From assembly GCF_006345805.1 (NCBI RefSeq), contig NC_043008.1, positions 29,202,001-29,266,000 of the forward strand: 64,000 nucleotides of DNA, in the 5' to 3' direction. The DNA comes from Octopus sinensis. Lineage: Eukaryota. Made by a program: the position numbers and the translations under genes. The notes under the pieces are model-generated. The model had not been told where the DNA came from. It was given only the letters and a program-made list of their open reading frames with translations, and made no database searches. How positions within the stretch are numbered: position 1 is the stretch's first letter; every line of letters starts with the position of its first letter. Positions 2,440 to 63,842 of the stretch are shown in pieces.

Positions 2440-3528
<1,089 letters not shown>

Positions 3529-3571
3529 TAATTCATTTTTATTAATTCATTAATGTATATGTAATACATCG

Positions 3572-4290
3572 GTGTGCTCCACAACAAGAATACCCCTCGA
3601 TACAACACCCTTGGTAAAACTGAGTGAGGGAGTGTCAACCAGTCATCTACCTACGATGCTCCATCTATTTAGTCAGATGCCGAAATGTATAATGTACTTG
3701 ATAACAGACTGGCCAAAGCAAACTGCATTCAGTAGATTGTACGAAAGAGTCTGGAATAATAGCCATCTGAAGAAAGAATCCGACATCAGTATCTACAGAT
3801 CCGTCGTTCTGATTACCCAGTCACCACCACTTACAACGCCTTGTATGATAACAAATCTGCTGAAGATACATCTACGTTGGGCAGGACACTTCAACAGGAT
3901 GGGGGAACATCAACTGCCCAATATCATACTGTACGGTGAAATGTGCTCTGGTCATCGTGATATAGGAGTACCTATATACAAAATCCCGTCATATCTACCA
4001 CACTAAGTACTTCCAGTTGTCTGCTTTCACTGTTAAGCGTAAAACATGGAACCTTGATGTCCACTGTGTCATAGTCTCCTTTGAAAAATACCGCAAGACC
4101 ATACTTAAAGAAAAGAGGGAAAGAAAGCTAGTAACAGAGAGAGAAAGAGAGAGAGGAAGCGAGAGAAAGAGAGAGAGAGAGAAGTAAAATCAAGGACACT
4201 ACGGCCGTCCCGCTTCCATTGCTACCAATGCGGTCATGCTTGTCTATCTTTAATCGGACTCGTCACGTGTCAAATGCCTACAACGAACGT
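3572..4290 (+). mobile_element. RTE-clade (BovB-like) LINE 3' remnant
   Basis: TAFSRLYERVWNNSHLKKESDISIYRSVVLIT and LRWAGHFNRMGEHQLPNIILYGEMCSGHRDIG match the post-RT C-terminal motifs of RTE elements (LRWAGHV.RM...RLP..ILYGEL). A degenerate C-x2-C...H motif lies near 4215-4270. Confidence 0.8.
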
Positions 4291-7833: not shown

Positions 7834-8837
7834 TTAAATTTCAAAATAGTTCCCCTTACACTCCACACACTTATACACCGGTGTTGCAGTTATTCGATCC
7901 AATTGGTATAAAAGCTTTCATACTGTTGGTCAAAAATGTCATCAACAGTAGATATAACGTCATCATAATTGCGATACTGATACCCAGCCAAGCGTTTTTC
8001 TTATCCTCCTGTGGGGGAAGAGATGATAATCAGGAAGGGACAAATAAGGAGGCAGGTCAAAGTCAAAGTCCCTCAAAGCAGCCACTGGAACCAAAGACGT
8101 GTGTGCTGGAGCGTTGTTCGGATGTAACAAGACCACTTTCGTCTATTTTCCAGGTTCTTTTCTTCGTGATGGCTTTACGTGACTGCCTCGGGATATTAAC
8201 ATAGTGATCCCCACCGATGATGTCTCCCTTTCGATATTAGTCCGTAAACTTAATGCCTTTTGCATTTCAAAGCCGAGGCCATCACATTTCGTGCAGATCA
8301 CACGATCTTGTTTTTACTTGTAGTAGATGTGGACAGGTGTTTCCACTGTATAGACGGTCTCCTTGTCTCTGACTTAAAATGATGAACGCAACACACACCT
8401 AACTGCGGAATCGTTCTATAAAACCACCTGGATTTGCCTCAAACATTGTCAGATTTCCCTCTCTGTGGTCAACCAGGTGCGCTTCTGATCAGGAGTCAGA
8501 AAATGCAGTACTCACCACCACATTCATTGAGCAGAATATTCTCAACATTCTAACAGATGATGCTAATAGAATTTGGTCTTTGATTTACAATCAATCGCTT
8601 CCCATCAATCACCATGTATTGAACACGATCGATGTTTTCCCCGCTAGTTTTAGTTGCAGGATGTCCAGATGTTGGATCTACTTCAACACTCTCCATTAGC
8701 CTCCTAAATGCAGGTGCCCATTTTGAAGCGGGAACGTCATCCACTTATTGTGCAACCTTGTCAGCATGAATGTCCTTGGGATCTAAGCTATTTTTACAAA
8801 CATGCTTAATAATTCCACGATGCCAAATTTAGTTCAT
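7834..8837 (-). pseudogene. Degenerate mariner transposase
   Basis: Fragmented reading recovers SKWAPAFRRLMESVEVDPTSGHP..T..ENIDRV, LTPDQKRT, WKH, a decayed DNAPAH motif, PDYHLFP and YRNYDDVISTVDDIFDQQYESFY; many stops and frameshifts. Confidence 0.8.
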
Positions 8838-8840
8838 TTT

Positions 8841-9164
8841 TGGATTTGGTTTGCAAGATTCTTTATATGATTTCGTGTGTTGAAGCATATTCTGTTGTAT
8901 CTGGGGAGAGTCATTTTCTTTTTGTGCCTTATAATATAACACACTCACCGGTAAAATTTCCACTTATTTCTTATTTTTATTTTCCTAAAATTTTCGTTGC
9001 GTCTTCCAACATTTTCAATAGTTTTGACGCAAGACTATTGAAAAGGTTCCAAGACGCAACGAAAATTTTAGGAAAATAAAAATAAGAAATAAGTGGAAAT
9101 TTTACCGGTGAGTGTGTTACATTATAAGGCACGAAAAGAAAATGGCTCTCCCCAGACACAACAG
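8841..9164. mobile_element. 324-bp insertion with 16-bp TSD, containing a 137-bp-arm hairpin
   Basis: AAATTTAGTTCATTTT at 8825-8840 and 9165-9180; arms 8890-9026 and 9030-9166, 3-nt loop, 8 mismatches, no indels. Confidence 0.9.
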
Positions 9165-12100
9165 AAATTTAGTTCATTTTGATGAAAAGTCGCAACTAGT
9201 TATATTTGAAATCTTTGAACAGTCAGAAGTCAGTTTACCTGAAAAGAAACAATGCAATTATTAATAAGATGTACTGAAATGCATGTGGGATTTCACAGCT
9301 CTAACACGATAATCAGTCTATAAACTTTGCAGTCAACTCTTGCATATGATCTTATGTTACTCTTTAATGGTACAAGGACGATGACTGAATTTTTGTAATG
9401 CATATACATCTATGAAGATGTTCGTGGTATGTCCATTATAGTTATGTTGAGTGTCATTTAGTGGAGTTGTAAAGCTTTATGTATCATAGACTTGGAAACA
9501 GAAGTTTCCTGGTGTGAGTGCTCGCAAATATATATTATCATCAGTGGCATGTAAGGCTGCAAGTAATGCTAACTAGACAGTAATAGTTAGTCATACAGTT
9601 GTTTGCATTTGATATTTATATTCATTTTGTGAAGCCGGGAAGCTTATATGCATGACATATAAGCTCAATTTATAGCACTGGAAACGGAAGTAATACACAT
9701 GTAATTTGTAGCCTCTCCTTCCTCTTGAGAATTATGCTATTTATATATTTCTTGTCAATAGTAACTATGGACACTTGAGAATGGAGGTAATTCGTTAATG
9801 CGTAAGAGGAAGATGTATGCCTATTTACTGGTGACATGACCTTAGCCAGCTCTGAGGAGCAGCGAGCTACTATTGTAGGAGCAAATAGAAGCAAATAGAA
9901 CAGTGTATGTTGCCTGTGGCGTATCTGTGATTCACATAATGCCATTCCGACGGGTGACGAGATGACCCTTCCCTCGAATGATGTGAAACAAAAACCAACC
10001 TAGTTGTGAAAAAATTACTCTATTATGGTCCCATTTGGGCGTTGTAAAGAATCGATTATTGTTTCGATTCGAAATATCAAGAGAAAGATCAGTCATTCGG
10101 ACGCAGTCGGAAATATATGGGTCTAACTTACGTGTTGCAATGCATCAAATTACTTTTCATATATTAATCCTCCTTTTAACGTTGTTTAAATTTTCTCAAT
10201 ACATTTTCCTTTCGGTGAGTATACAAGAGACTGTACATTTTCCGCCTGTTTTGAATATTATAGTCTCTTGCTTTTGGCTTTTTTAAGGGGGTGGGGACAT
10301 TTAACAGGTTAGTAAAGTTAATTTAGCTGAGATGTCATTGAAAAGCAATCTCTGGTGGTGAGCCACATCCACAGTTATATTGTCTCGTGAAGATGTATAC
10401 CCAAATCTTTTTGTTTTTTAATACAACAACGCTACCCTCGCTATTTCAAATCCTGATTAACGTTTATAATATTACAAGTATCGATGTTGCTGAAAATTCC
10501 CCACATTGCAAATACTACATCGAGATGAATTTTCAGTAAGGCTAAATTATAAGCACTTCGATCCATTTCTATAGGTCCATTTACTTAGATGGAGGCTGCA
10601 ATTCCATACCAATAAAAAGCATTTCTTTTTTAGGATAACGCCATCGAAAATGTACTCTGATCTTGCTTTGTTCACTCTTGGGAGCGTAGAATACGCTATA
10701 TTTTACGTACGAAATTCGCCATACGTATCTCAAAAATGGATAACAATTGCGTACTCTCATTCAACTGGCAAGGCCCGGAGGTATCCATTGCTCAAACACC
10801 CTCAATAAAGCACACATCCATGCACAAACATGTATTGAGATATCAAATAGTAAATTTAAAAAATCATTGTTCGTATAGAAAAGGCTGCGGTCAAATTTAG
10901 ACATTAGTAACAGTTGTATAGGCATGAAACAATCGTAAGTACAAGTGCAAACTTTGCAGCACAGACGTGGTTCTTTAAAAACTAACATATCATAACTCAT
11001 CCAAAGTTGGGTTTTAAGAAAACTTACAAATTCAGAAACAGATTGTTTTGGAGGCGGAGGAGGAAGAAAAAAACTATAATATACTGCTGCTAAACGACTC
11101 AGCGTAAATAAAGACAAATATACATTCGTGCCAAAATACATAAAGACACTTGCATACAAATACATGTTCATGTGTTTCTATTTGCTATATAGTTCCTATC
11201 AGTATTCTAGGAGCACTTTGCATAACCTCGCTGTAAATGACAAGGAATGTGGCTTACCTGAGTCTATGACACTTATTATGTCTACATATCGCTTAATGGG
11301 TGTTTTTCGCTTCTAGTCGATTTATATACAAGGCACACCTGCTTTTAAGAACAACAATATACTGTGCAGTTAAACTCGTAATTTTCTATTCTTTCTGATT
11401 TTTACAGCCTCTGAAGCAGCAAACGGTGTCCGAATTAAGTAAATGCTCTGCATGATTAACGGTTTTACATAGCCTCTGTTTTCTATGTGAGGTAGACAGA
11501 TTCATTTTACTTGTTTGTTTAATTCATATACACATTAAGGCACAGTCTTCTTGCGGAGTTAAGCTCACTATCAGTGTTAAGATATCTAATTCAGATAAAC
11601 CATTTTCGTTTCTACTACCTTGTTCACGGGCACCTTTCTGTAATATTTGTACATATACACACTAACACACACTCATAGACACACAAACACAGATACGCGC
11701 GTGCTCCCAACACACAAATACAAATATGCATACATTGCGTATGTATATATATGTAAATACACGCACACACCCAAACACACATATATATGAATGTATGTAT
11801 GTATATACGTATGTATTCATACATACGTACTTATATACATGCATACGTACCTACATTTATACATATATGTACATAAATACTGCATAACGCCTGCTTCTCA
11901 ATTTCTTTTGAAATAGGTGTGTGTAATTTTCTCAAGTTGTTCTAACATAATTATCTATGTAGGTCTCAGCAAACCAATGTCTCTATCCAACTATTTAAAT
12001 ATTCATAGGTATTCGTCTATGTCTGTCAACCAACATAGCCATCTACAATAGCTGCCACTTAAGCAAAATCCACTGAATTAAAAACCACCAGGCTCGTTGC

Positions 12101-12896: not shown

Positions 12897-13100
12897 GTTT
12901 CAAATTTTGGTTAAGGCTGGCAATTTTGGGGAGACCGTAAGTCGATTAAATCGACCGAAGTGCTCGACTGATATTTATTTTATCGACCCCAAAACGATGG
13001 AAGGCAAAGTTGAACTCAGCAGAGTTTGAGCTCAAACCATTAGGACAGTTGAAATGCCACGAAGCAACTTTTGCCCGGTGTACTAAAGATTCTGTCACCT
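12897..13100 (-). mobile_element. tRNA-derived SINE (family B), degenerate
   Basis: Shares blocks with 30731-30941 and 55095-55306 (GTTTCAAATTTTGG, TATTTATTTTATCGACCCC, AAGGCAAAGTTG). Confidence 0.7.
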
Positions 13101-13952: not shown

Positions 13953-14715
13953 TGTGTTTCTGTTTCCTTTTTTTATATTTATATATACATATAGCGGCAT
14001 ACGTACACACTTGCCCTCACTTATAGTAGCTATGTATCTAAATTTTGTACGACTCTTACTCTAACTTTTAGTCCCTTCATACATTCCTCCTCTTTCCTTT
14101 TTCTCTCTCCACCTCTCATTCTTACTCACACTTCTTGGACCTCTCTTTCTGTAACACTCGCCTTCCCCTTGTTTATCTCCCTTTTACTATTCCCCTTGTC
14201 TGATTTTTCTTCTAATCTTTCAATCCCACTACCCAAACCCTCCCTCCTTTTCCGGCCAGCCACGATCTTTCTTTGTTGGCCTGACTGCCGACCGCCAAAA
14301 CCTTTTATGTCAATCACCTACGTTTTTGCCTTTAGGCTTTCACTTCATACACGCCAGCTCAATTTGATTCGTTCTCAGTCGAATGACATCTGTTGTTATT
14401 TTCTTGTTGTTTGTATTTGTAATTGCGTACCATATACTCTGTTTCTTGCCTTTGTTGACGTACACATTCACTAACTGTGTTACAAAAATATTAGTGCTCT
14501 TACCTTAGAATTTTTTTGACACTACCAGATCAAACTCATTCAAGTGTAACTGCCCGAGACAGTAGGGACTGCTCGTAATTTGACTGATGAAAGAAGGCCA
14601 CGAATGACCCTGTCCTTCTAATTGTTGTTTCCTGACCCTCTAATTGTTGTTTCTCCTGTCCACCTTTGTATCATCTACCAGTCGAAATGTTTTATTGTAC
14701 TCTATTTTTTGTTCC

Positions 14716-14792
<77 letters not shown>

Positions 14793-15049
14793 GGTGTGTG
14801 TGTATGTGTGTGCATTTGCATGTGTATGTGCGTGTGTATACATATATATTTTATAATTATAAATATAATTAGGGTTCAGCTAATTATAATTACGTTTATA
14901 ATTACAAAATATTTACATAATTTTACCTATAATGGTTATTTTAACGTACCGAACTACTTGGTAAAATTATGAATTAATTGATTGATTAATTAATTAATTT
15001 AATTCATAAATGTTACCATTTTATTATTAACATATATATATATATATAT

Positions 15050-15344
15050 GCTGAGACTCCCTTCCGTCATGACTGACCATGGGATTGCACCTAGAAATTT
15101 ACCCTCCCAGGCACAAGTCCGGGCAAGGTTAGTTATGAAAGACCAGCAATCGCACATTCATACCGGCCTCGTCTCTCCACGCCAACAGTGTTGTCCAAAG
15201 CCCATACAGCGTGGTACCTGTGAGGTTGCAACTCATTTCTACAGCTGAGTGAACTGGAGCAACGTGAAATAAAATCTCTTGCTCAAGAACACAACACGCA
15301 GCCCTCTCCGGGATTCGAACTAAAAACCACTGAGCCATGTGCCT
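15050..15344 (-). mobile_element. tRNA-derived SINE (family C-like)
   Basis: B-box-like AGTTCGAATCC on the minus strand at about 15311-15321; head region resembles 23030-23114 and 25760-25830. Confidence 0.65.
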
Positions 15345-20383: not shown

Positions 20384-20916
20384 GGATTATATATATATGT
20401 ATGTATATATATATATATGAATATGTATATATGTATATATATATGCATATATACCTATATGTGCATGTGTGAGTGTGTATCCATCTATGTATATATTTTT
20501 AGATATTTAAACTATTACGCACACACACGCACACACACACACATATATTGTCTCGATAGAAAGAAATGTATGCATATTCACGTATATATAATTATGTATG
20601 TATACACACATTCTTCCATTTACTTGGTATACATATACAATTACGGACGATTACATTTTCCTATATACATACACATACATACATAGTCTTTTATTCTTTA
20701 CTTTCTTCCGGCATTTTACTGCAGCCTTCCTGGAGCACCGCCTTTAGTCGAAAAAATCGATCCCAGTACTTATTTTTGTAAGCCTAGTAATTATTCTATC
20801 TACATCTTTTTTCGAACCGCTAAGTTACTGGGACGTAAACACAAGAACATCGGTTGTCAAGCGATAATGGGGAGTGGAAAAACACAGACACACAAGTATA
20901 CACATACACATATATA

Positions 20917-22207
20917 CGAGGGGCGTTCAATAAGTAATGCCCCTGACCCACTTCCCATAGCAGTAGAGCAACGAAACTTGGCACAGTTATTAGTCTTTTT
21001 CTACATAGGAACCACCCAGAGTTACGCATTTCTCACATCGTTTGATGCAGCTCTGAAGACCGTTTTTGTAGAAGACCCTAGCTTGGTCCTCCAACCACGA
21101 CGTGACTTCAGAAATCAAGGCTGCATCATCTGGGAAACGCTTTCCTTTCAAAAACAACTTCATGGCTGGGAAGAGGTGAAAATCAGAGAGTGCAGGTCAG
21201 GAGAGTAGGGAGAATGGGGGATGAGTTCATAGCCGCACGCCTTTGCTTCTGATCTGGCGACACGCGAGTTGTGGATCGGAACGTTGTCCTGCAGGAGGAG
21301 GATGCCTTTGCTGATTTTGCCCCGCCTCTTGATTTTGATAGCTTCTCTTAATTTCCTCAAAAGTGAAGCATAATAGACTGCTGTAATTGTGGCACCCTTT
21401 GCCAAGAAATCTGTCATCACTACTCCGTCCTGGTCCCAGAAGACTGTGAGCATGACCTTGCCAGCGGAGGGCTGCACCCTTGCCTTCTTTGGAGGAGGTG
21501 AGTCACGGTGCTTCCACTGCACTGACTGGGCTTTGGTCTCTAGATCATAGTGATGGACCCAGGTTTCATCCTGTGTAATCAGTCTTTTGGAAAATTTTGA
21601 CTCATCTTCTTGGCACATCTTCAAATTCATCCTCGCGCAATCGACGCGTTCTTGCTTCTGGAAAGGTGTGAGCAGCCTGGGAATCCATCTGGCAGACACC
21701 TTTTGCTTATGCAAATGGTCATGAATGATAGTCTCCACAGACCCGGTACTAATCTTGACCTCATGGGCTATTTGGCGAATAGTTATGCGTCGATCTTCCA
21801 AAATGGCAGCCTTAACTTGACGGACAGATGCCTCATCAATGGCAGAAGGGGGCGACCAGATCTGGGAGCTGTTTCCACAGAGTTCCGACCATGTTTGAAT
21901 TCACGATGCCAGCGTTTTACAAGATCATATGATGGCGTATCATCACCATAAGTTACTTTTATTTCATCAAAAGTCTCCCGTGGTGTGCGTCCTTTCAAAT
22001 ACAAAAACCGCATCACTGCTCGACACTCAACAGGCTCCGTTTCATACTTGACTCAGTTCAAACACCTGTAAATCAGAAACCACAATTAGTTCAGAGCTGT
22101 AATTTGCCACTTAATCTATAGAGATATAAATAATTACACATACAAAATTTCAGCTAGATCAAACAAATGCAAGTGGGTCAGAGGCATTATTTATTGAACG
22201 CCCCTCG
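20917..22207 (-). mobile_element. Full-length mariner transposon (1291 bp)
   Basis: 37-bp TIRs at 20917-20953 and 22171-22207 (35/37 match); TA on both sides (20915-16 and 22208-09). Confidence 0.97.
20990..22040 (-). pseudogene. Mariner DD34D transposase, about 350 aa, inactivated
   Basis: VSARWIPRLL, ITQDETWVHHY, KVMLTVFWD, LLQDN, HSPYSPDL motifs. Start codon reads ACG; single-base deletions at about 21850 and 21193 split it into ORFs 21783..22016 and 21160..21801 plus the C-terminus ending YVEKD*. Confidence 0.93.
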
Positions 22208-30307: not shown

Positions 30308-30620
30308 TTATTATTATTCTTGTTCTTATTGAGTAAGAGAGCTGCACATGCCATCGAAATGACACAGGGGGACAAATATACGTGTGTCACAACCATATGT
30401 GCTCGACATTCTTATTACTGGTTAAGGTCAAGTCAAGCAACAGACGAGCAAATCTGTTGTATTGAGCAGAATATTTGGTGTAGCCTATCTTTCATACCAA
30501 AACAAATGAATATACATGATAACACTTCCAATCATTTAAGTTCCAAAGCCATGAAAGCCACTACTAGGTAGTGCATCAGGTATATTATTATCATTATTAT
30601 TATCATCATCAAAATCATCA

Positions 30621-30702
<82 letters not shown>

Positions 30703-30730
30703 TATTATTATTATTATTATTATTTTTATT
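30135..30730. repeat. (ATC)n and (ATT)n trinucleotide arrays
   Basis: Arrays at about 30135-30320 and 30590-30730 with unique sequence between them. Confidence 0.9.
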
Positions 30731-30941
30731 AAGGCGGCGAGCTGGCAGTATATTTAGCGCGCTGGACGTTATGCTTACCGGTAAATCGCCCGTCGTTACA
30801 TTCTGAGTTCAAATTCCCCCGAGTTCAACTTTGCCATTCATTGATTCAGGGTCGATAAATTAAGTACCAGTTGAACACTGGAGTTGATGTAATTGACACA
30901 TATCACACAAAATGGCTGCCATTGTGGCAAAATTTGAAACT
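30731..30941 (+). mobile_element. tRNA-derived SINE (family B)
   Basis: Head GGCGGCGAGCTGGCAG, B-box-like GAGTTCAAATTCC at 30805-30817, tail GGCAAAATTTGAAAC followed by (TAT)/(TGT) repeats. Confidence 0.8.
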
Positions 30942-31529
30942 ATTATTATTGTTGTTGTTGTTGCTTTTATCTTTGCCATCATAATCATCATCACTGCGAT
31001 TCTTGGTATTGCTTTGTTCCTCTCGATTTTGCTTTCTTCTGGGTTTTTTTAATGGTAATACACAATCTTTAATTTAAGAATTGCCATTTTCTCCAATAAA
31101 TGCTGTGCGTTTTCCCTTATCGAAAATATTCAATTTGGCGTTTGTCTTTACCACTTCCCCCTCTACAAAATCTATTAGTATTTTCTATTTGCCCTTAATA
31201 TTGGCAACTAATGTTGATGAAATTTCTCTTATTAGAAACAATTTCATCATATATGCTATGTACCTGATCTCAGTTATCACTAATAATATTACTGCAGTGC
31301 ATGTGTATTTCCTAATATATAAATAGAAATATACAGACACTGTTAAATAATGAGTTGTTCGTTTGTCACACAGTTATATATATAACAACGATTGGTTGCC
31401 TAAACTATGAAATCAAATTTCCATTAATTTCACGAGTAAATCAGATTACGTAATGATGTCAAAGAACTAGCAGTTAAATATTCAAATAAAATTTCTATTC
31501 ACTCTTGAGTCTATCAAAACTTCAGTACA

Positions 31530-34489: not shown

Positions 34490-35620
34490 TTGCTTTGGAC
34501 ATGGCAAAAAAATACGGATAAGATTGTTGTGTGGGAGATTGTCCCACCGAAGCAGTGGTTAAAAGATATGGAGGAGAGGAAATTACACGCGCACGCGCCC
34601 GCAGACAAATCGGTATATATAAAATTCTATTACACACGCACGCATACACAAACACACGCATGTATATATGCTCGCTCTCGAAGGAATTTAATCGGTGGTG
34701 GTTAGAACTTATTCTAAAGTTCTTTATTCTATCACCGTCTTCCGGAAACCAGTTATAGAACATGAACTGAAAGGCTATTTGTCCTCCGTGAAATACATAT
34801 CCCGCAGTGTCAAATATGCAACCGTATAGCTGCTGTTTGACAACCGGGAAAAGGCTCGCAATTTTGCGAGCCAGCCCTTGGAGAGCAACGAAATTCTGTT
34901 CCTGCTGTCCTACTGCGGGAGGAAATTAATAAGGGCCTGGGTATGTGGGTTACCCCCAGGCACCGAGGTGGGTTGGATTGAAGATACCATCCGACGGGGA
35001 CCGTAGGATAGCGACCCAGGCTCTTATATGTAAGGGTATTGCTGGCGGTCGATTGGGAAGGGTCAAAAGCGATTTCGACCCTGTGGACCCCATCGGCCGC
35101 AACAGACGTGATTTTTCCAGATTTTGTTTTGATGGATGGCTCAAGGTATCCAGTGATACTTGAGTGTTGCCCCCACTAAGTGTCACTCGAGTCTGGAGTC
35201 AGGTCACATTAAGAAGGACAGCCCCCGGGGCTGTGGTAAGGTCCCGGAGCAGGGAAAGCTGAAGGTGCCCTCTGCTATCCCATTGAATGGAGAAACGGAG
35301 GAAGTCGTTGAGAAGTAAAAGAAAGGTGAGCAACAATGGTTGCTCACCAACAGATGCGCTGGTTGTGGGAGAGTAGGAGGATCCCCTGGGTGTGCCGGTT
35401 GAGGCCCCTACCCCCGCAACTGTAAGGAGGAAAAATAAAATATAGAGAAACGGGAGACGGTCAGCGGATGTCGTTGTGCCGCCTACCGAACCCGATGCTG
35501 TTTGAGGTCATGGTGACCTGTAATGAGGAAGAATTTGCTTTCCTCTTTCCGGACCTCGACCTGCCGATGCATGCTTTCCTGCAGGCGGCAGGTCATTTGC
35601 TTGGGGACTCCGATGAGGAG
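34490..35620 (+). mobile_element. Non-LTR retrotransposon ORF1 (gag-like) remnant
   Basis: GC-richer island; LLFDNREKARNFASQPLESNEILFLLSYCGRKLIRAWVCGLPPGTEVGWIEDTI; decayed CCHC knuckle CHSSLESGHIKKDSP at 35181-35225. Interrupted by a 110-bp insert at 34584-34693. Confidence 0.6.
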
Positions 35621-42073: not shown

Positions 42074-42343
42074 TCTTTCTTTTATTTGCTTCAGTTATTT
42101 GACTGCGGCCATGAGGGAGCACCGCATTTAGTCGAGCAAATCGACCCCAGGACTTATTCCATCGGTCTCTTTTGCTGGGGACAAACACAGACACACAAAC
42201 ATATGCGTATGCAGTTTCCGTTGACCAAAACGCTTTGGTCCACCCGAAGGTATAGTACAAGGCACTTGATCAGGTGCCACATAGTGGGACTGAACCCGTA
42301 ACCATGTGTTAAGCAAGCTACTTACCACACAGCAACTCCTGCG

Positions 42344-42636: not shown

Positions 42637-42898
42637 AGTGTGTGTGTATGTGTGTGTGGTGTGCGTGTGTGTGTGTGTGAGTTTGTATGTTTGTGTTTCT
42701 GTGTTTGTTCCCCCAACATCGCTTGGCAACCAATGCTGGTATGTTTACGTCACCGTAACTTAGCGGTTCGGCAAAAGAAACCGATATAATAAGTACTAGG
42801 CTTACAAAGAATAAGTCCTGGGGTCGATTTGCTCGAATAAAGGCGGTGCTCCAGCATGGCTGCAGTCAAATTACTGAACCAATGAAAGAGTAAAAGAG

Positions 42899-42900
<2 letters not shown>
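42519..42900 (+). mobile_element. SINE family A, head-less copy with central TA/TG microsatellite
   Basis: Best-preserved body in the window, ending in GAGTAAAAGAGTA tail repeats; used as the reference for the other copies. Confidence 0.9.
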
Positions 42901-42939
<39 letters not shown>

Positions 42940-44904: not shown

Positions 44905-46314
44905 TACATACATCTGCATTCCAGGAAATGGGTACATGCATTAATTATATATAAATTCGTCTCTGTCTATCTGTCTGTCTGTCTGTCTCTCTTTCTCTCT
45001 CACACACAGTCTCCCTCTCTCTCTCTGTCTCTCTCACACTGATATATAATATATATATATAATATATATATATATAATATATATATATATAATATATATT
45101 ATATATATATATATATATGCCGTATAAATGAATGCACACACGGAACCAGTTCCATTCTTGAATAAAATAATACAAATATATATATATATATGTATAGCAA
45201 CATGTATATAGTTATAAATATTCTCTAGATATACACATCGGAGCGCGAGCTTGCATAAACGCATACATCCATGCGGGAACACACAGAGCCACATACACAT
45301 ACACGCACATACACACACAGACACATACGGATACACACAGACACACACAGTTCAACACACATGCACACACCCACACATGGGGATGTATGTACCCGGGGAG
45401 GGATGACTGTAAACAAATAATTGTCGTCATACACAGACATGCTTATACATTTATACACGTAGATATAAAGTTGCTTGAATTATAGAAAAAATAAAAATAA
45501 ATAAATAAATAAATAATATATATATATATATATATATTTTTTATATATATATATATCTATATATGTATATATCTGTGTGTATAAATATATGTTATATTTA
45601 TATATTCATTGATTGAGACGCGTATATGTATACCGAACCATCGTCGAAAAAGAACACACACGCACCAGTACACGTAGATTTAAACATACTTGTACGTAGT
45701 TTTTAATATACATTCACAAAATATATTTCCATATATCTCACATACATTCACAGATACATGCAAAAATCTTACATAGTTGTATTGATGCGAATACAACACA
45801 TGCAGGTACGTACATAAACATAACTCAGTGCGCGCGCACACATACAAACAATACTAGTAACCCATGTCTAACACGCGCATAGAAAGGCATGCACACACAT
45901 AATAATATGAATAGTTTGTCACACACGTACTAGCCCTCCTACATAGACAAACGAACACGCACACACGCACAGACGTCTGTAGACGCACTGATACAAAAAC
46001 ACCCGTATATACCAATTTCCCAGTGTGGGTATTATAGAATTGCGTTTACATTAAGTTCTTTGTGAGTTTAATACTACATACATATACACGCGCACGCGCC
46101 CGCAGACAAATCGGTATATGTAAAATTCTATTACACACGCACGCATACACAAACACACGCATGTATATATGCTCGCTCTCGAAGGAATTTAATCCAAGAA
46201 AATAAAATACACGCAAACAAATAGAAAATACACACATTCATACATAGACAGACACATACATACATACATTCATACATACATACATACATACATACATACA
46301 TACATACATACAAC

Positions 46315-50459: not shown

Positions 50460-51190
50460 TACTACTATAATAATGATAATGTCGAGAATTATAATATTAT
50501 AAGCAATAATGATGATAAATTCTGGCAGGGGCACAAGGCCATGAATTAAGAGAGAAGAAAAAAGTTGATTGCACATGCACAATATTCAGTTGGTTCTTTA
50601 TATTTATCCACCTGAGAAGAATGTAAGCTAAATTCTCACTTGGCAGGAGTGGATCTTACACCACAATGAAGGCAAATACTGCATATTATTGCTGATGTTA
50701 CTGACAGTAACACTACAATTGCCACTACGTTATTTACATCATCAATACCAAAAGGCAATAGAAATAAAAAAAATGATAATATTGACAATGATGATGATAA
50801 AGATAGTGTTGAAGATGTTGATGATTTATTTTATTGAGTGCAAAATCCCTAGATTTTGAAGACAATATGAAAAGATGAAATGCAGAACACAAAAGATGGT
50901 ATTTACATCGACCATAAGGAAATCAACAAGAAGAATCGTTTTTAATATAGCATATACACACACACACATACAAGCATATATATATATATATATATCTATA
51001 TATATATATATATTATATATAATATATTATATATTATATATATATATTATTGGTGAATTGAAGAAATGGAGCTGAACGCAGATTGAACAGAAATCGTTTT
51101 ATTTCATTCTACACGTGTTTCGAAAGGCACAAATTACCAAATCCGATTGAATAATGGGACAATTATATATATATATATATATGTATGATC

Positions 51191-55083: not shown

Positions 55084-55306
55084 TAATAAAAGTAATTTCA
55101 AATTTTGCCACAAAGACAGCAATTTTGTTTTTTGGATGAGTCGATTACATGGACCCCAGCTTTCAACTGGTATTTATTTTAACGACCCAGAAAGGATGAA
55201 AGGCAAAGTCGTCCTCGGAGAAATTTGAATGCAGAACGTAAAGCCGGATGAAATGCCGCTAAGCACTTTGCCCGGCGTGCGAACGATTCTGCCAACTCTC
55301 CGCCTT

Positions 55307-55355
<49 letters not shown>

Positions 55356-55470
55356 TAATAATAATAATAATGATAGCAATAATAACAAGAACAACAAGAA
55401 CAACAATAATTTTAATAATAAAAATTATAATAAAAATAACACCAACAATAATAATTGTAATAATAATAAC

Positions 55471-60271: not shown

Positions 60272-60779
60272 GTCTATCTATATACATATATATGTATATA
60301 TATACATACACACACACACACCCACACTCACACATATGTATATGTATAAATATACATGTTTCACATATACATATATAAAATGTGTATCAATACTTATGTA
60401 TGTATAAACTAAGCTAAATATAATATGTAAGTATACAGCGTACGTATTAATTAAGAAATAAAAGTATATGTAGGTTTATGAATTATATTTATGCTCTGTT
60501 ACCTCTAATTTACCAGAATATTATTCGGAAGGGTTCAACTTTAATACATACCGTTTTAATATCTAGCACTGTGCATTTAGAACTACTCAGTTCAATGTGA
60601 TCCACATCGCTTGTATATTCTTTTAGACGAGTATGTAATGTGAAATATTTTGTGCCACTTTGCTTGTATATACATTAAGATTAGATTGTAATTTCAGATA
60701 TTTCGTAGTTCTTTCTAACACGACAAAATAATTAACAAAAGAAGGTCAAGAAATTTATTGCACGTTGTCCATATTGTTT

Positions 60780-61221
60780 CACGCTGCTGTGTAATGGATT
60801 ATGTCAAGGATGGCAAAGTGTATAGGTTTCTGCCTTCCCTATGGATAACATTGGTGGTGTAGAGAGAGGAGGCGACTATGCACAGGCGACTGGTAGTCGT
60901 ACATAAACAACCGTACCCGGAATTGTGACACGGAGGTGAACATTATAGGTGCACTCCAATGATCATTTATAACTGAAGGGTGTCTTTAGCTTTATATTCT
61001 TTTATACAGCTAAAGACACCCTTCAGTTCTAAATGATCATTGGAGTGCACCTAGAATGTTCACCTCCGAGTCACAATTCCGGGTACGGTTGTTTATGTAC
61101 GACTACCAGTCGCCTGTGCATAGTCGCCTTCTCTCTCTACACCACCAATGTTATCCATGGGGAGGCAGAAACCTATACACTTTGCCACCCTTGACATCAT
61201 AATCCATTACACAGCAGCGTG
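60780..61221. repeat. Fold-back palindrome, arms about 217 bp
   Basis: 60780-60996 pairs with 61003-61221; 6-nt loop; about 7 substitutions and 2 small indels. Confidence 0.97.
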
Positions 61222-61225
61222 TGTT

Positions 61226-61420
61226 CTTTTATACTTTTGTTTCAGTCATTTGCCTGCGGCGATGATGGAGCACCGCCTTTAGTCGAGCAAATAGACCCCA
61301 GGACTTTAGCTTTGTAAGCCTAGTACTTATTCTATCGTTTACCTTTGCTGAAATTTAAAGTTACGGCGACATAAACACACAAGCATCGGTTGTCAAGATA
61401 TGGTCGGGGGATAATCATAG
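61226..61420 (-). mobile_element. SINE family A 3' half
   Basis: GGAGCACCGCCTTTAGTCGAGCAAAT.GACCCCAGGACTT...GTAAGCCTAGTACTTATTCT matches the reverse complement of 42790-42890; abuts the hairpin. Confidence 0.85.
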
Positions 61421-62217
61421 ACACACACACATATACATACACCGACCGAAACAGAAACGACGAACTGGAAAGCGACTGACGATAGAAAGTTCCGAATAAC
61501 CTGTTCATCATTTTACATGTATTTTGTGTCGTCTAACTGGCCGGATGATTTCTTCTCACCTGCTATGTTCATGTTCCATTTTTTGTTTTTCTTTATATAT
61601 ACATACGCACCTATATATATATATAGATATATATATATATATTATATTATATTATATATATATATATATAATATATATAGCATATTCATCTACCTCTGGT
61701 ATTTCAGTACTCTTCATTCTACCTTGTTTCGCATGTATGTGCTCACTTCCTCTCTCTCTCTAATATATATATATATATATACATAAATATAAATATATAT
61801 ATATAAATATATATATATAAATCTATATATATGTATATATGCATGTATGTATGTATATATATACATACATATACATACCTATATTTGTGTTCTCTAATTT
61901 TCACACGGGTAATTTAAATATGACTACAATACTTTAGATAAATTTAAGATTGTATAGGTCGTTTTGACGCCGAATTATTCAGCCAGCGACTGTGGGTTTT
62001 CTTTAGTTTGATAAAATGTAATTTCTACGTGTATGTAAATGTATATATATTTAGATACATACGTACACTTTTGTACAAAGGCTACCGTTAAAGTAGCATG
62101 TTATACATTGGCTCTTGATAGTATTACATCCTATATTTCTATAGCTTATAAGCGTAAGTATATATATTCAAGCATGTTAACATAGCGGAAACTTTTAAAG
62201 AATTTATGTATATATTG

Positions 62218-62273
<56 letters not shown>

Positions 62274-62760
62274 ATATATATATATATATGTATATGTATA
62301 TGTGAATACATATATATATATGTATATGTAAATGTATATATATATATATTGATATACATATATATATATATGTATGTATATACATATATATGTATACATA
62401 TGTATACGTGTATCTACGCGTATGTATGCGTGTGTGTGTGTGCGTGCGTGCGCGCGTTGTATTTCTGTAAGGGTTTACTACAATCTACATGAGGTAAATT
62501 CAGTATACGAATACATACGTAGTTTGACTATTTGTAAACACGGGAAAGGTTCAAAAGGGAACAGAGGACCGGGAAATCCGTGTGTGGAACATATCAAACT
62601 GATAATGTGTCAATAAGAAATCTTCTCCACTTGCGTCACTTCTAGAACTTACCGTTCTCTGTACGAATATGCATAGTCACACGCATGTATAGAGGCGCGC
62701 GCATATATTAGTATATCTATGCACGTATGCATATCAGTGGCTATCTATCTATCTATCTAA

Positions 62761-62792
<32 letters not shown>

Positions 62793-63133
62793 TTCTTCTG
62801 TTGTTTCATCTGAGAGCTGTAGCCATGCTGATGCACCACCGTTTTGCTACAATTTTATTACTAAGAGCCTCTTCTAATATATATATATTTCTTAAATATA
62901 GCCACGAAACACGTGTATTTATTTTAGCCAATATATACGTTTTGTTTATTATCTGGCACATTACTTAATCATTGATATATGTGTCTTATCTTATATTTAA
63001 TTTTTCTATAGGATGTAATTTATTTCTATGTGGTATAATCGAATTTTTTCATTGTTCAATTAATAAAATTTTTTCTAATTTATATACATATATACATATA
63101 AGACAAAAGGGTACGTGCGTCGCTATATATTTA

Positions 63134-63173
<40 letters not shown>

Positions 63174-63176
<3 letters not shown>

Positions 63177-63420
63177 AAAAAAATACAAACTGGGGCAACA
63201 ACGCAAAACATTTAGAAGACGATACAAAAAACACGGGAGGGACATTCGAAGCTTTCAATCTTCAGTCAAGAACCGGATCATTCTCGCATTTCGGCTGATA
63301 ATCTTGTGCGAGGATGATCCGGTTCTTGACTGAAGATTGAAGGCTTAGAATGTCCCGTCCGTGTTTTTTGTATCGTCTTCTAAATGCTTTGCGTTCTTGT
63401 CCAAGTTTGTATTTTTTTAC
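63174..63420. repeat. Fold-back palindrome, arms about 115 bp
   Basis: 63174-63288 pairs with 63307-63420; 18-nt loop TTTCGGCTGATAATCTTG; about 9 mismatches and 1 indel; TA-rich runs on both sides. Confidence 0.95.
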
Positions 63421-63431
63421 GTATGTGTATA

Positions 63432-63479
<48 letters not shown>

Positions 63480-63842
63480 ATAAATGAAAGAATGGAGACG
63501 TACGAAGACGTTAACAAAATTCCTTTACTCTCGACTTATGTTTCGAAGACAAATGTTTCATTCCAAGGAATAAAGGGTGCATTATGCAATCTTCTCATCA
63601 GGAAAGAAAGGGAGCCTCCGACAACAAACAAACAAAACAAAAAATTATCGCTTCGTTTACCATGTAGGCAGTCATCGAAATTTTTGTTTGTCTTTTGTCG
63701 AGAGAGGCACCCTTTCTTTCCTGATAGAAGATTGCATAATGCCCCTTTATTCCTTTGGAATGAAAATATGTTGTCTTCGAAACATATGTCGAGAGTAAAG
63801 GAATTTTGTTAACATTTCGTTCGACTCCATTCTTTCATTTAT
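63480..63842. repeat. Fold-back palindrome, arms about 170 bp
   Basis: ATAAATGAAAGAATGGAG (63480) pairs with CTCCATTCTTTCATTTAT (ends 63842); pairing continues inward to about 63651/63676; roughly 85-90% identity. Confidence 0.92.

What the first reader, a model, noticed from the sequence alone, without database searches (positions are those of the whole stretch)
60780..63842. Cluster of three unrelated long hairpins in 3.1 kb: candidate fold-back retro-insertion and dsRNA system
With 8890-9166, the window holds four sequence-unrelated palindromes of 250-440 bp with 3-25-nt loops and no coding capacity. Shared architecture without shared sequence argues for a common process rather than one MITE family. 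The TSD-flanked example points to reverse transcription with fold-back. In a lineage with very high ADAR activity, such a process would continually seed editable dsRNA or endo-siRNA sources. This is my best candidate for an under-described system here; the mechanism and function are hypotheses.
Basis: inference. Interest (0 to 1): 0.7.

Follow-up and report, generated by a model that had tools for sequence, protein, structure and literature searches.

The report
Retroposon-made hairpins in octopus DNA
The four long hairpins are real, but they look like ordinary by-products of short retroposons landing in TA-rich DNA: one is two separate SINE insertions lying tail to tail, and three have the head-to-head layout already described for Penelope-like elements, not a new dsRNA system.

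Summary
The window has exactly four complex palindromes: 8890-9166, 60780-61221, about 63174-63423 and 63480-63842. They are unrelated in sequence and far beyond chance.

The window is octopus DNA.

Hairpin 60780-61221 is not a fold-back. Its arms are two 5'-truncated copies of one SINE lying tail to tail. The left copy runs 34 nt further, and the right copy has its own 11-nt target duplication, TTCTTTTATAC, one copy of which forms most of the "loop".

The other three have the opposite geometry, with 5' ends at the centre and 3' ends outward.
- 63480-63842 carries a type-I hammerhead ribozyme motif of the Penelope-like kind and abuts (TA)n.
- 63174-63423 sits between two (TA)n tracts.
- 8890-9166 has a 16-nt target duplication and a 49-nt extension on one side only.

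These features match the published insertion signature of Penelope-like elements: an inverted 5'-truncated partner, a one-sided tail and (TA)n targeting. Only one hairpin has element-specific evidence.

No octopus DNA could be fetched, so copy numbers and junction variability were not tested. The arm mismatches show no sign of editing or of selection for pairing. Verdict: known kind, modest interest.

The parts
8825..8840 (.). H4 target-site duplication, copy 1 (AAATTTAGTTCATTTT)
   Evidence: Exact 16-nt direct repeat with 9165-9180. It is the only flank-to-flank repeat of 8 nt or more.
8841..8889 (-). H4 one-sided 49-nt extension, inside the TSD but outside the palindrome. Inferred to be the 3' end of the inserted element.
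   Evidence: Sequence and arm alignment. Comparable to the 30-40-bp 'tail' found at only one end of PLE insertions (PMC8557442).
8890..9166 (.). H4 palindrome: arms 8890-9026 and 9030-9166, loop 9027-9029
   Evidence: 129 of 137 positions pair, no indels, MFE about -202 kcal/mol.
9165..9180 (.). H4 target-site duplication, copy 2. It overlaps the arm end by 2 nt (microhomology).
60746..60996 (+). H1 left arm: a 5'-truncated SINE-A copy with a short TA-rich tail. It extends 34 nt beyond the palindrome boundary at 60780.
   Evidence: Local alignment to the SINE-A copy at 15054-15341(-) continues upstream of 60780. nhmmer E = 1.8e-26 to that copy.
60997..61007 (.). TSD copy 1 of the right-arm SINE insertion (TTCTTTTATAC). 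It makes up most of the H1 'loop'.
   Evidence: Exact 11-mer repeated at 61224-61234. Reached in 1 of 300 shuffles.
61008..61223 (-). H1 right arm: a second, independently inserted 5'-truncated SINE-A copy
   Evidence: Its homology to SINE-A stops exactly at the palindrome boundary. It is flanked by the 11-nt TSD.
61224..61442 (-). SINE-B copy. Its 3'-terminal 11 nt (61224-61234) is TSD copy 2 of the H1 right arm.
   Evidence: Alignment with three other SINE-B copies in the window, all starting with a microsatellite followed by TCTTTTAYTCTTT. Translated SINE-B hits only Octopus bimaculoides proteins.
61443..61595 (+). Single-arm relative of the H2 arm family ('R2'), followed by (TA)n at 61596-61680
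   Evidence: nhmmer E = 1.1e-3. Alignment A3. Sequence.
63139..63173 (.). (TA)n tract abutting the H2 left arm
63174..63423 (.). H2 palindrome: left arm 63174-63288 (sense on - strand), loop 63289-63306, right arm 63307-63423 (sense on + strand). 3' ends point outward.
   Evidence: Polarity comes from the single-arm relatives, which end T-rich plus a microsatellite.
63432..63477 (.). (TA)n tract shared by the H2 right end and the H3 left end
   Evidence: Only 8% of window positions lie within 15 nt of a (TA)n run.
63480..63842 (.). H3 palindrome: left arm 63480-63646 (sense on - strand), loop 63647-63677, right arm 63678-63842 (sense on + strand). 3' ends point outward.
   Evidence: Polarity comes from the 5'-truncated single copy at 51050-51161.
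63528..63606 (-). Candidate type-I hammerhead ribozyme in the H3 left arm: CUGAUGA, helix II GAAGA/UCUUC with a 46-nt insert, then CGAAAC-AUAA-GUC. The right arm (about 63711-63801, +) has the same motif with a 1-nt core deletion.
   Evidence: The only hit of a descriptor scan over both strands, against 0 hits in 40 shuffles. Rfam Hammerhead_1 aligns end to end with all core bases, at 12.6 bits against a gathering score of 34. The centroid fold reproduces helices I and II.
51050..51161 (-). Single-arm, 5'-truncated relative of the H3 arm family ('R3'), with (TA)n on both sides. It keeps CGAAAC-ACGU-GUA.
   Evidence: nhmmer E = 2.8e-5. Alignments A4 and A5. Sequence.
14580..14720 (+). Single-arm relative of the H2 arm family, ending T-rich plus (TG)n
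   Evidence: nhmmer E = 2.4e-4. Alignment A3. Sequence.
15035..15341 (-). Reference SINE-A copy, with A-box-like TGGCTCAGTGG, B-box-like AGTTCGAATCC and an (AT)9 tail

Best explanation
The hairpins are passive products of short non-autonomous retroposons integrating into TA-rich and microsatellite DNA in an octopus genome. They arose by two routes.

Route 1 (H1, shown). A SINE-A copy already lay tail to tail against a SINE-B copy. A second 5'-truncated SINE-A then inserted in the opposite orientation at that TA-rich junction and duplicated 11 nt of target. Two same-family copies tail to tail form the 442-bp palindrome. The 'loop' is the first copy's tail plus the target-site duplication (TSD).

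Route 2 (H2, H3, H4; architecture shown, mechanism inferred). Each is a head-to-head pair of one short element, with 5' ends at the centre and 3' ends outward. Each was made in a single integration event. This is the insertion signature described for Penelope-like elements (PLEs): strong 5' truncation, an inverted 5'-truncated copy adjoining the 5' end, a one-sided terminal extension, a variable or undetectable TSD, and a preference for (TA)n.

H3 carries the PLE-type hammerhead motif, so it is a PLE terminal fragment or a PLE-dependent element. H2 and H4 are assigned by architecture only.

The inverted arm most likely arises in one of two ways. The nascent cDNA may snap back on itself at the template's 5' end. 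Alternatively, both cut target strands may prime reverse transcription. Neither is shown here.

If transcribed, all four would form tight dsRNA and be ADAR substrates, but nothing indicates that they are maintained for that.
For: Host: translated SINE-B hits only Octopus bimaculoides proteins.

H1:
- The arm is 73% identical to the SINE-A copy at 15054-15200 (E = 3e-19; alignment).
- The left arm's homology continues 34 nt past the palindrome boundary, while the right arm's stops at it.
- The exact 11-mer TTCTTTTATAC flanks the right arm and was reached in 1 of 300 shuffles.
- That 11-mer is the conserved 3' terminus of SINE-B.

H3:
- It holds the only complete hammerhead descriptor hit in 128 kb of both strands, against 0 in 40 shuffles.
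- The Rfam Hammerhead_1 model aligns 1-45/45 with every core base matched.
- The third family copy keeps GAAAC-(palindromic tetraloop)-GUH, with the loop changed from AUAU to ACGU.
- A helix III of 1-2 bp capped by a palindromic loop is the metazoan and PLE type (PMC4209133).

Polarity and family structure:
- Single-arm relatives of H2 (14580, 61443) and of H3 (51050) keep the outer end next to a microsatellite.
- They lack the inner part or the other arm.
- This is the pattern expected of 5'-truncated retroposons.

(TA)n context: H2 has (TA)n at both ends, H3 at its left end, and the 51050 copy at both ends. Only 8% of window positions lie near such a run.

H4: a 16-nt TSD encloses the whole structure, with a 49-nt extension on one side and a 2-nt microhomology at the other junction.

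Literature:
- PLE inverted partner, one-sided 30-40-bp tail, (TA)n bias, and PLE remnants in Octopus (PMC8557442).
- cDNA snap-back at the 5' junction of target-primed reverse transcription (TPRT) (PMC11371274, PMC11331408).
Against: - No octopus genomic DNA could be retrieved, so copy numbers, consensus sequences, a partner autonomous PLE and junction variability are all untested.
- H2 and H4 have no hammerhead motif and no similarity to any coding element.
- No RT or GIY-YIG ORF was found among the ten best ORFs of the window.
- The H3 hammerhead scores 12.6 bits against Rfam's gathering score of 34, has a 46-nt helix II insert, and is broken in one arm.
- The H2 and H3 family relatives are weak matches (E from 1e-3 to 3e-5).
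- A 16-nt TSD with snap-back fits an ordinary LINE as well as a PLE.
- TSDs cannot be read for H2 and H3 because the flanks are (TA)n.
Confidence: 0.6

Rival explanations
1. H2, H3 and H4 are snap-back products of an ordinary LINE-driven TPRT acting on SINE-like RNAs, with no PLE involved. The reverse transcriptase reaches the RNA's 5' end, folds the cDNA back and copies it before the 5' junction forms.
For: The 16-nt TSD of H4 fits a LINE well, as do a nick context of TTTT/GA on the priming strand and the 2-nt junction microhomology. Very short loops (3, 18 and 31 nt) are natural for snap-back. Snap-back junctions were observed with R2 protein in cells (PMC11371274, PMC11331408). H2 and H4 have no hammerhead motif.
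Against: H3 carries a PLE-type hammerhead motif. The combination of (TA)n targeting, a one-sided extension and an inverted partner is the described PLE signature (PMC8557442). No LINE 3' end in the window matches the arms.
Confidence: 0.18
2. H2, H3 and perhaps H4 are palindromic MITEs or Foldback-like DNA transposons that moved as whole units by cut-and-paste.
For: They are near-perfect palindromes with short loops. The TA-rich flanks of H2 and H3 are compatible with a TA duplication. Tc1 and mariner remnants lie in the window. Clear TA-flanked palindromic MITEs occur in the unrelated control contigs.
Against: H4 has a 16-nt TSD and a 49-nt one-sided extension. No cut-and-paste superfamily I know of makes duplications that long (my own knowledge, not tested). 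The terminal bases of the H2 and H3 arms do not form crisp TIRs next to TA. Single-arm relatives keep only the outer end next to a microsatellite. H3 carries a retroelement-type ribozyme motif. There is no similarity to the window's Tc1 TIR CAGTGGCGGCC....
Confidence: 0.08
3. The palindromes arose after insertion, by DNA-level fold-back. Examples are replication template switching, or hairpin-primed repair at breaks in (TA)n, which is self-complementary and fragile.
For: TA tracts abut H2 and H3 and lie at the centre of H1. (TA)n covers 4.4% of the window.
Against: The right arm of H1 has its own 11-nt TSD. The TSD of H4 encloses both arms with a 3-nt loop and no TA tract, so the arms must have formed at integration. 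The centres of H2, H3 and H4 hold no TA repeat.
Confidence: 0.07
4. The hairpins are a maintained dsRNA system, such as hpRNA or endo-siRNA loci or dedicated ADAR substrates, and not neutral debris.
For: The predicted dsRNAs are very stable. Octopus has an exceptionally high fraction of loci able to form long near-perfect dsRNA and the strongest hyper-editing signal among the animals compared (PMC5625713).
Against: Arm mismatches are as often transversion-type as transition-type, with no excess of G.U and no A-to-G bias: 9 wobble, 6 A.C and 16 transversion-type in all. H3 has 8 indels. No Rfam family reaches its threshold, and the sub-threshold MIR hits occur on both strands, as for any long hairpin. 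The arms are plain TE fragments.
Confidence: 0.03
5. The hairpins are assembly or sequencing artefacts, that is, chimeric fold-back reads.
For: PLE-type tandem and inverted structures are known to trouble assemblies (PMC8557442).
Against: The arms differ by 3-8% substitutions plus indels. Two of the hairpins have clean TSDs. The structures are short and embedded in ordinary sequence.
Confidence: 0.02

Closest known systems
Penelope-like element insertion structure: pLTR with hammerhead, an adjoining inverted 5'-truncated copy, a one-sided 30-40-bp tail and (TA)n targeting (Evgen'ev & Arkhipova 2005; Arkhipova 2006; Craig et al. 2021, PMC8557442; Cervera & de la Pena 2014, PMC4209133)
   Same: H2, H3 and H4 are head-to-head inverted pairs with 3' ends outward. 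H2 and H3 have (TA)n flanks. H3 has a type-I hammerhead motif with a 2-bp helix III and a tetraloop that is palindromic (AUAU) in the right arm and mutated to AUAA in the left arm, which holds the intact core. H4 has a one-sided 49-nt extension and a TSD of non-fixed length.
   Different: No RT or GIY-YIG coding sequence is attached, and the arms are only 115-185 nt. They are therefore extreme 5' truncations or non-autonomous derivatives. H2 and H4 lack a hammerhead. Helix II of the H3 motif carries a 46-nt insert. No partner element was identified.
cDNA snap-back at the 5' junction during target-primed reverse transcription, seen with R2 protein in human cells (PMC11371274, PMC11331408)
   Same: It predicts exactly the H4 layout: TSD, then the template's 3' part present once, then arm, a tiny loop and arm, joined to the target by microhomology.
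   Different: It was observed for engineered R2 insertions. It has not been shown for octopus elements or PLEs. It cannot explain H1.
Closely spaced inverted SINE pairs, such as inverted Alu pairs (PMC3215922)
   Same: H1 is two copies of one SINE in opposite orientation that would form dsRNA if transcribed.
   Different: The spacing is only about 16 nt, tail to tail, because the second copy targeted the TA-rich tail junction. In human DNA such tight inverted pairs are depleted.
Palindromic MITEs, such as the about 200-bp Harbinger repeat that dominates hyper-editing in Xenopus (PMC5625713)
   Same: A single locus folds on itself into tight dsRNA without needing a neighbouring inverted copy.
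   Different: Those elements are cut-and-paste units with a palindromic consensus. Here the arms are retroposon copies, single-arm relatives exist, and one hairpin has a 16-nt TSD.
Metazoan non-LTR retrozymes (PMC7229834)
   Same: They are short non-coding elements with a type-I hammerhead, low GC and TSDs longer than 4 bp.
   Different: Retrozymes occur as head-to-tail tandem units, whereas H3 is an inverted pair.

Membership tests
Penelope-like element (PLE) insertion | ORF with PLE-type RT and GIY-YIG endonuclease | tested here: not met
   The arms are non-coding. The ten best non-repetitive ORFs of the window gave no RT or GIY-YIG hit. Hairpin ORFs have no homologues. At most these are terminal fragments or non-autonomous derivatives.
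Penelope-like element (PLE) insertion | Hammerhead ribozyme motif in the terminal repeat | tested here: inconclusive
   H3: one descriptor hit against 0 in 40 shuffles. The Rfam Hammerhead_1 alignment is full-length with all core bases, but scores 12.6 bits against a gathering score of 34. H2 and H4 have none. Some PLE clades (Naiad) also lack it (PMC8557442).
Penelope-like element (PLE) insertion | Inverted 5'-truncated copy adjoining the 5' end (head to head) | tested here: met
   H2 and H3: polarity set by single-arm relatives that keep the outer end plus a microsatellite. H4: polarity inferred from the TSD and the one-sided extension.
Penelope-like element (PLE) insertion | 30-40-bp extension ('tail') at one end only | tested here: inconclusive
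   H4 has a 49-nt extension on one side. H2 and H3 show none that can be told apart from microsatellite.
Penelope-like element (PLE) insertion | Insertion bias for (TA)n, with a TSD that is variable or cannot be read | tested here: met
   H2 has (TA)n on both sides, H3 on its left side, and the 51050 copy on both sides. The background is 8% of positions. H4 is the exception, with a 16-nt TSD in unique DNA.
SINE (arms of H1) | Pol III A and B boxes or a tRNA-like head | tested here: inconclusive
   TGGCTCAGTGG and AGTTCGAATCC can be read in the 15054-15341 copy. ARAGORN and Rfam find no tRNA. The H1 copies are 5'-truncated and lack the head.
SINE (arms of H1) | Dispersed copies, 5' truncation, a simple-repeat tail and a TSD | tested here: met
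   There are three copies in the window, with an (AT)9 tail on one and an 11-nt TSD on the H1 right copy.
MITE / Foldback DNA transposon | TIRs with a fixed short TSD flanking the whole palindrome, with copies moving as units | tested here: not met
   H4 has a 16-nt TSD and an asymmetric 49 nt. In H1 the TSD flanks one arm only. H2 and H3 have no crisp TA-flanked termini, and single-arm relatives exist. H2 and H3 alone would be inconclusive.
Metazoan non-LTR retrozyme | Head-to-tail tandem units, each with a type-I hammerhead, and circular RNA | tested here: not met
   H3 is an inverted pair, not a tandem. Circular RNA cannot be tested here.
miRNA / hpRNA locus | Match to a curated family, or small RNAs from the stem | tested here: not met
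   There are no Rfam gathering-level hits. The sub-threshold plant MIR hits occur on both strands and are generic hairpin matches. Small-RNA data cannot be tested here.

The most novel reading that the evidence does not exclude
Integration-coupled inverted duplication by a (TA)n-targeting retroelement machinery, either PLEs or whatever mobilises the (TA)n-tailed octopus SINEs, is the main generator of the tight self-folding hairpins in octopus. Those hairpins give octopus the highest density of near-perfect dsRNA loci among the animals compared (PMC5625713). The process would then be a principal feedstock for hyper-editing and possibly for endo-siRNAs. Each insertion would also seed a new (TA)n target, which would produce clusters like this one.
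Probability: 0.15. Interest if true: 0.6.

Novelty: new member of a known kind. Interest (0 to 1): 0.3.

Why it matters
Octopus is reported to have an unusually high fraction of loci that can form long near-perfect dsRNA, and the strongest hyper-editing signal among the animals compared (PMC5625713). That study did not say which repeats are responsible, because octopus repeats were not annotated there.

This window gives a concrete and testable answer for four such loci. They come from retroposon integration geometry, either tail-targeted SINE pairs or PLE-style head-to-head pairs, and not from palindromic MITEs as in Xenopus.

It also gives natural examples for the still unexplained step of PLE integration that makes inverted copies. 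In H4 the TSD, one-sided extension, 3-nt loop and microhomology junction are all readable.

For annotation, it is a warning. Such hairpins draw sub-threshold miRNA hits and look like a 'system' when they are TE debris.

Tried and rejected
**Finding other genomic copies**
- Exact look-up of the 142-aa ORF across H3 found nothing.
- A protein search with concatenated hairpin ORFs gave 0 hits.
- SINE ORFs hit two O. bimaculoides UniRef proteins, but their genes are not on record.
- Contigs fetched through the mariner transposase (L001-L003) lack SINE-A and SINE-B, so they come from another species. They were used only as a rough control.

**Nested-insertion TSDs in the loops of H2, H3 and H4**
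- None rose above the shuffles.

**Footprint of ADAR editing or of selection for pairing**
- The arm mismatches show neither.

**Hammerhead motifs in H2 and H4**
- None was found. The CUGANGA...GAAU strings conserved in the H2 family do not form helix II, so I rejected them.

**Rfam**
- There were no gathering-level hits. The sub-threshold MIR hits are generic. No tRNA was found in the SINE-A head.

**Link to the window's Tc1 and mariner elements**
- The TIRs show no similarity.

**PLE or LINE coding remnants**
- No Pfam RT or endonuclease was found in the ten best ORFs.

**A TSD for the left SINE-A copy of H1**
- Only a non-significant 7-mer turned up.

**The H2 loop as the continued 5' sequence of one arm**
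- The only support is a CCGAAA match to relatives, which is too weak to use.
Full report
**Observation**

An inverted-repeat search of the two regions and a self-BLAST of the whole window with a composition filter show exactly four complex palindromes.
- H4, 8890-9166: 137-nt arms, 3-nt loop.
- H1, 60780-61221: arms of about 215 nt.
- H2, about 63174-63423: arms of about 115 nt, 18-nt loop, (TA)n on both sides.
- H3, 63480-63842: arms of about 166 nt, 31-nt loop.

All other self-complementary hits are TA or CA microsatellites. The four share no sequence.

Arms in dinucleotide shuffles reach only about 20 nt. Predicted RNA folding energies are -176 to -402 kcal/mol. Three of four random points fall within 3.06 kb with P = 0.025.

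Substitution divergence between arms is 2.8-7.9%, with indels in three of the four. That argues against assembly artefacts.

**Host**

The window is AT-rich, and (TA)n of 10 nt or more covers 4.4% of it. Translated pieces of an abundant repeat (SINE-B) hit only two Octopus bimaculoides proteins in a database of 5.8 billion. The window is therefore octopus or a close relative.

No octopus genomic DNA could be fetched with the tools. Everything below rests on the window and on the literature.

**H1 is two independent SINE insertions**

The H1 arm is 73% identical over 147 nt to 15054-15200 (E = 3e-19). That stretch is the 3' two-thirds of a SINE copy (SINE-A, 15035-15341, minus strand). The copy has A-box-like and B-box-like motifs and an (AT)9 tail.

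In H1 the SINE 3' ends meet at the centre. Local alignment shows that the left arm's homology to SINE-A continues 34 nt upstream of the palindrome boundary, to 60746. The right arm's homology stops exactly at the boundary. The arms are therefore two copies with different 5' truncation points.

The exact 11-mer TTCTTTTATAC lies at 60997-61007, inside the 'loop', and again at 61224-61234, immediately right of the right arm. Only 1 of 300 shuffles reached this match. The 11-mer is the conserved 3' terminus of SINE-B, as shown by alignment with three other SINE-B copies.

Before the last event, a SINE-A copy and a SINE-B copy lay tail to tail across a few TA-rich bases. A second SINE-A then inserted there in the opposite orientation and duplicated 11 nt. 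H1 is a tight inverted SINE pair, not a fold-back.

**H2 and H3 have the opposite geometry**

Profiles built from the arms find weak single-arm relatives.
- For H2: 14580-14671 (E = 2.4e-4) and 61473-61535 (E = 1.1e-3).
- For H3: 51058-51161 (E = 2.8e-5).

Alignments and the sequences themselves show that these relatives keep the end that faces outward in the hairpins. That end is followed by (TA)n or (TG)n. The relatives lack the inner part and the second arm.

This is the pattern of 5'-truncated retroposons with microsatellite tails. In H2 and H3, then, the 3' ends and tails point outward and the 5' regions meet at the centre. H2 lies between two (TA)n tracts, and H3 shares one of them. No TSD-like repeat links their loops to their flanks, so the H1 route does not explain them.

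**A hammerhead motif in H3**

The sense strand of the H3 arms reads, in order:
- helix I, 5' strand: CCCUUUCUUUC
- core: CUGAUGA
- helix II: GAAGA...UCUUC
- CGAAAC-AUAA-GUC
- helix I, 3' strand: GAGAGUAAAGG

A descriptor scan of both strands of the window finds this as its only hit, at 63528-63606 on the minus strand. It found none in 40 dinucleotide shuffles.

Rfam's Hammerhead_1 model aligns end to end at the same coordinates with every core base matched. It scores only 12.6 bits against a gathering score of 34, because helix II carries a 46-nt insert. The centroid fold reproduces helices I and II.

The right arm has the motif with a one-base core deletion and an AUAU loop. The truncated copy at 51050 keeps CGAAAC-ACGU-GUA, again with a palindromic tetraloop.

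A helix III of 1-2 bp capped by a small palindromic loop is the metazoan type found in the terminal repeats of Penelope-like elements (PMC4209133).

**Comparison with the literature**

Craig et al. 2021 (PMC8557442) describe PLE insertions as follows:
- They are strongly 5'-truncated.
- They often carry a 30-40-bp extension at only one end.
- Their TSDs are variable, or unreadable because of a bias for microsatellites, (TA)n in particular.
- Hammerheads sit in the terminal repeats of canonical clades.
- Octopus genomes hold PLE remnants.

H3 meets four of these: the inverted partner, 3' ends outward, (TA)n, and the hammerhead. H2 meets the architectural ones.

H4 has a 16-nt TSD enclosing the whole structure, a 49-nt extension on one side, a 3-nt loop and a 2-nt microhomology at the other junction. 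This means that the palindrome formed during integration.

The molecular step that makes the inverted copy is unknown for PLEs. Snap-back of the cDNA, seen with R2 protein (PMC11371274, PMC11331408), or priming from both cut strands would each give this layout. That part is inference.

**What is not shown**

- H2 and H4 have no hammerhead motif and no link to a coding element.
- No RT or GIY-YIG ORF was found in the window.
- An ordinary LINE with snap-back remains a fair rival for H2 and H4.
- MITEs are disfavoured by the H4 TSD and asymmetry, by the single-arm relatives and by the ribozyme motif. For H2 they cannot be excluded without genome-wide copies.

**Function**

If transcribed, all four would be tight dsRNA and good ADAR substrates. 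This fits the reported excess of such loci in octopus (PMC5625713).

The arm mismatches show no excess of G.U and no A-to-G bias: 9 wobble, 6 A.C and 16 transversion-type in all. H3 has 8 indels. No curated RNA family is matched.

A 54-kb control from an unrelated invertebrate also contains complex palindromes, including a 560-bp one and a TA-flanked MITE. The evidence points to neutral TE debris, not a system.

**Clustering**

(TA)n tracts are both tails and targets for the short retroposons in this window: SINE-A, SINE-B and the H2 and H3 families. Insertions therefore pile up in such tracts. That pile-up, and not a local hairpin-making activity, accounts for three hairpins within 3.1 kb.

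**Verdict**

The finding is real and is explained mostly by known transposon biology. It counts as a new member of a known kind, of modest interest. There is a testable larger idea: that PLE-style integration geometry is a main source of self-folding dsRNA loci in octopus.

Noticed in passing
window 63528-63606 (-), with a degenerate twin at about 63711-63801 (+): A candidate type-I hammerhead ribozyme with a 46-nt insert in helix II. It scores below Rfam's threshold but is core-complete and is the only such motif in the window.
   Followed up: yes
window 15035-15341 (-), 20662-20910 (+), 42676-42922 (-), 42077-42155 (+), 61224-61442 (-): Two SINE families (here called A and B) have tails that are (TA)n, (CA)n or (TG)n microsatellites and not poly(A). 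Most (TA)n tracts near them may be SINE tails or targets. SINE-B is exonised in two O. bimaculoides protein models (P0121, P0122).
   Followed up: partly
window 61224-61442 (-) and 61443-61595 (+): A 5'-truncated SINE-B and a copy of the H2-arm family lie head to head with their tails outward. This is either a mixed-element version of the hairpin layout or a simple insertion into SINE-B's internal CA/TA repeat.
   Followed up: partly
window 34584-34693 and 46085-46194: A 110-bp direct repeat, 99% identical and 11.5 kb apart. This is far more similar than any other repeat pair in the window. Its origin is unexplained.
   Followed up: no
window about 2440-3205 (-): A Tc1-like transposon remnant with a 140-aa N-terminal ORF. 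It ends in the TIR CAGTGGCGGCCAAAATGTTCAGAAC directly against (TA)n and has an inner repeat of the TIR at 2988-3010.
   Followed up: partly
window 21160-22052 (-): A Mos1/mariner-type transposase remnant (HTH_48 plus Transposase_1). Relatives 84-88% identical lie on ENA metagenome contigs from a different, unidentified species, which suggests a widely shared mariner lineage.
   Followed up: partly
window 30584-30950 and 55085-55455: A 371-bp inverted repeat pair, 77% identical and 24.5 kb apart, belonging to another unclassified repeat family. Further pieces lie at 12940-13100.
   Followed up: no
window 3554-4003 (+): An ORF containing ...HLRWAGHFNRMGEHQLPNIILYGEM..., which from memory resembles the C-terminal region of LINE ORF2 proteins. 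Pfam gave no hit.
   Followed up: partly
L001 11535-12094; L003 7309-7462: Unrelated invertebrate contigs hold a 560-bp palindrome (86%) and a 154-bp TA-flanked MITE-like palindrome. Complex palindromes of this size are common outside octopus too.
   Followed up: partly
window 8890-9166 and 60920-61080: Long hairpins draw sub-threshold Rfam hits to plant MIR families on both strands (up to 103 bits against a gathering score of 195). This is a likely source of false miRNA calls in cephalopod annotations.
   Followed up: yes
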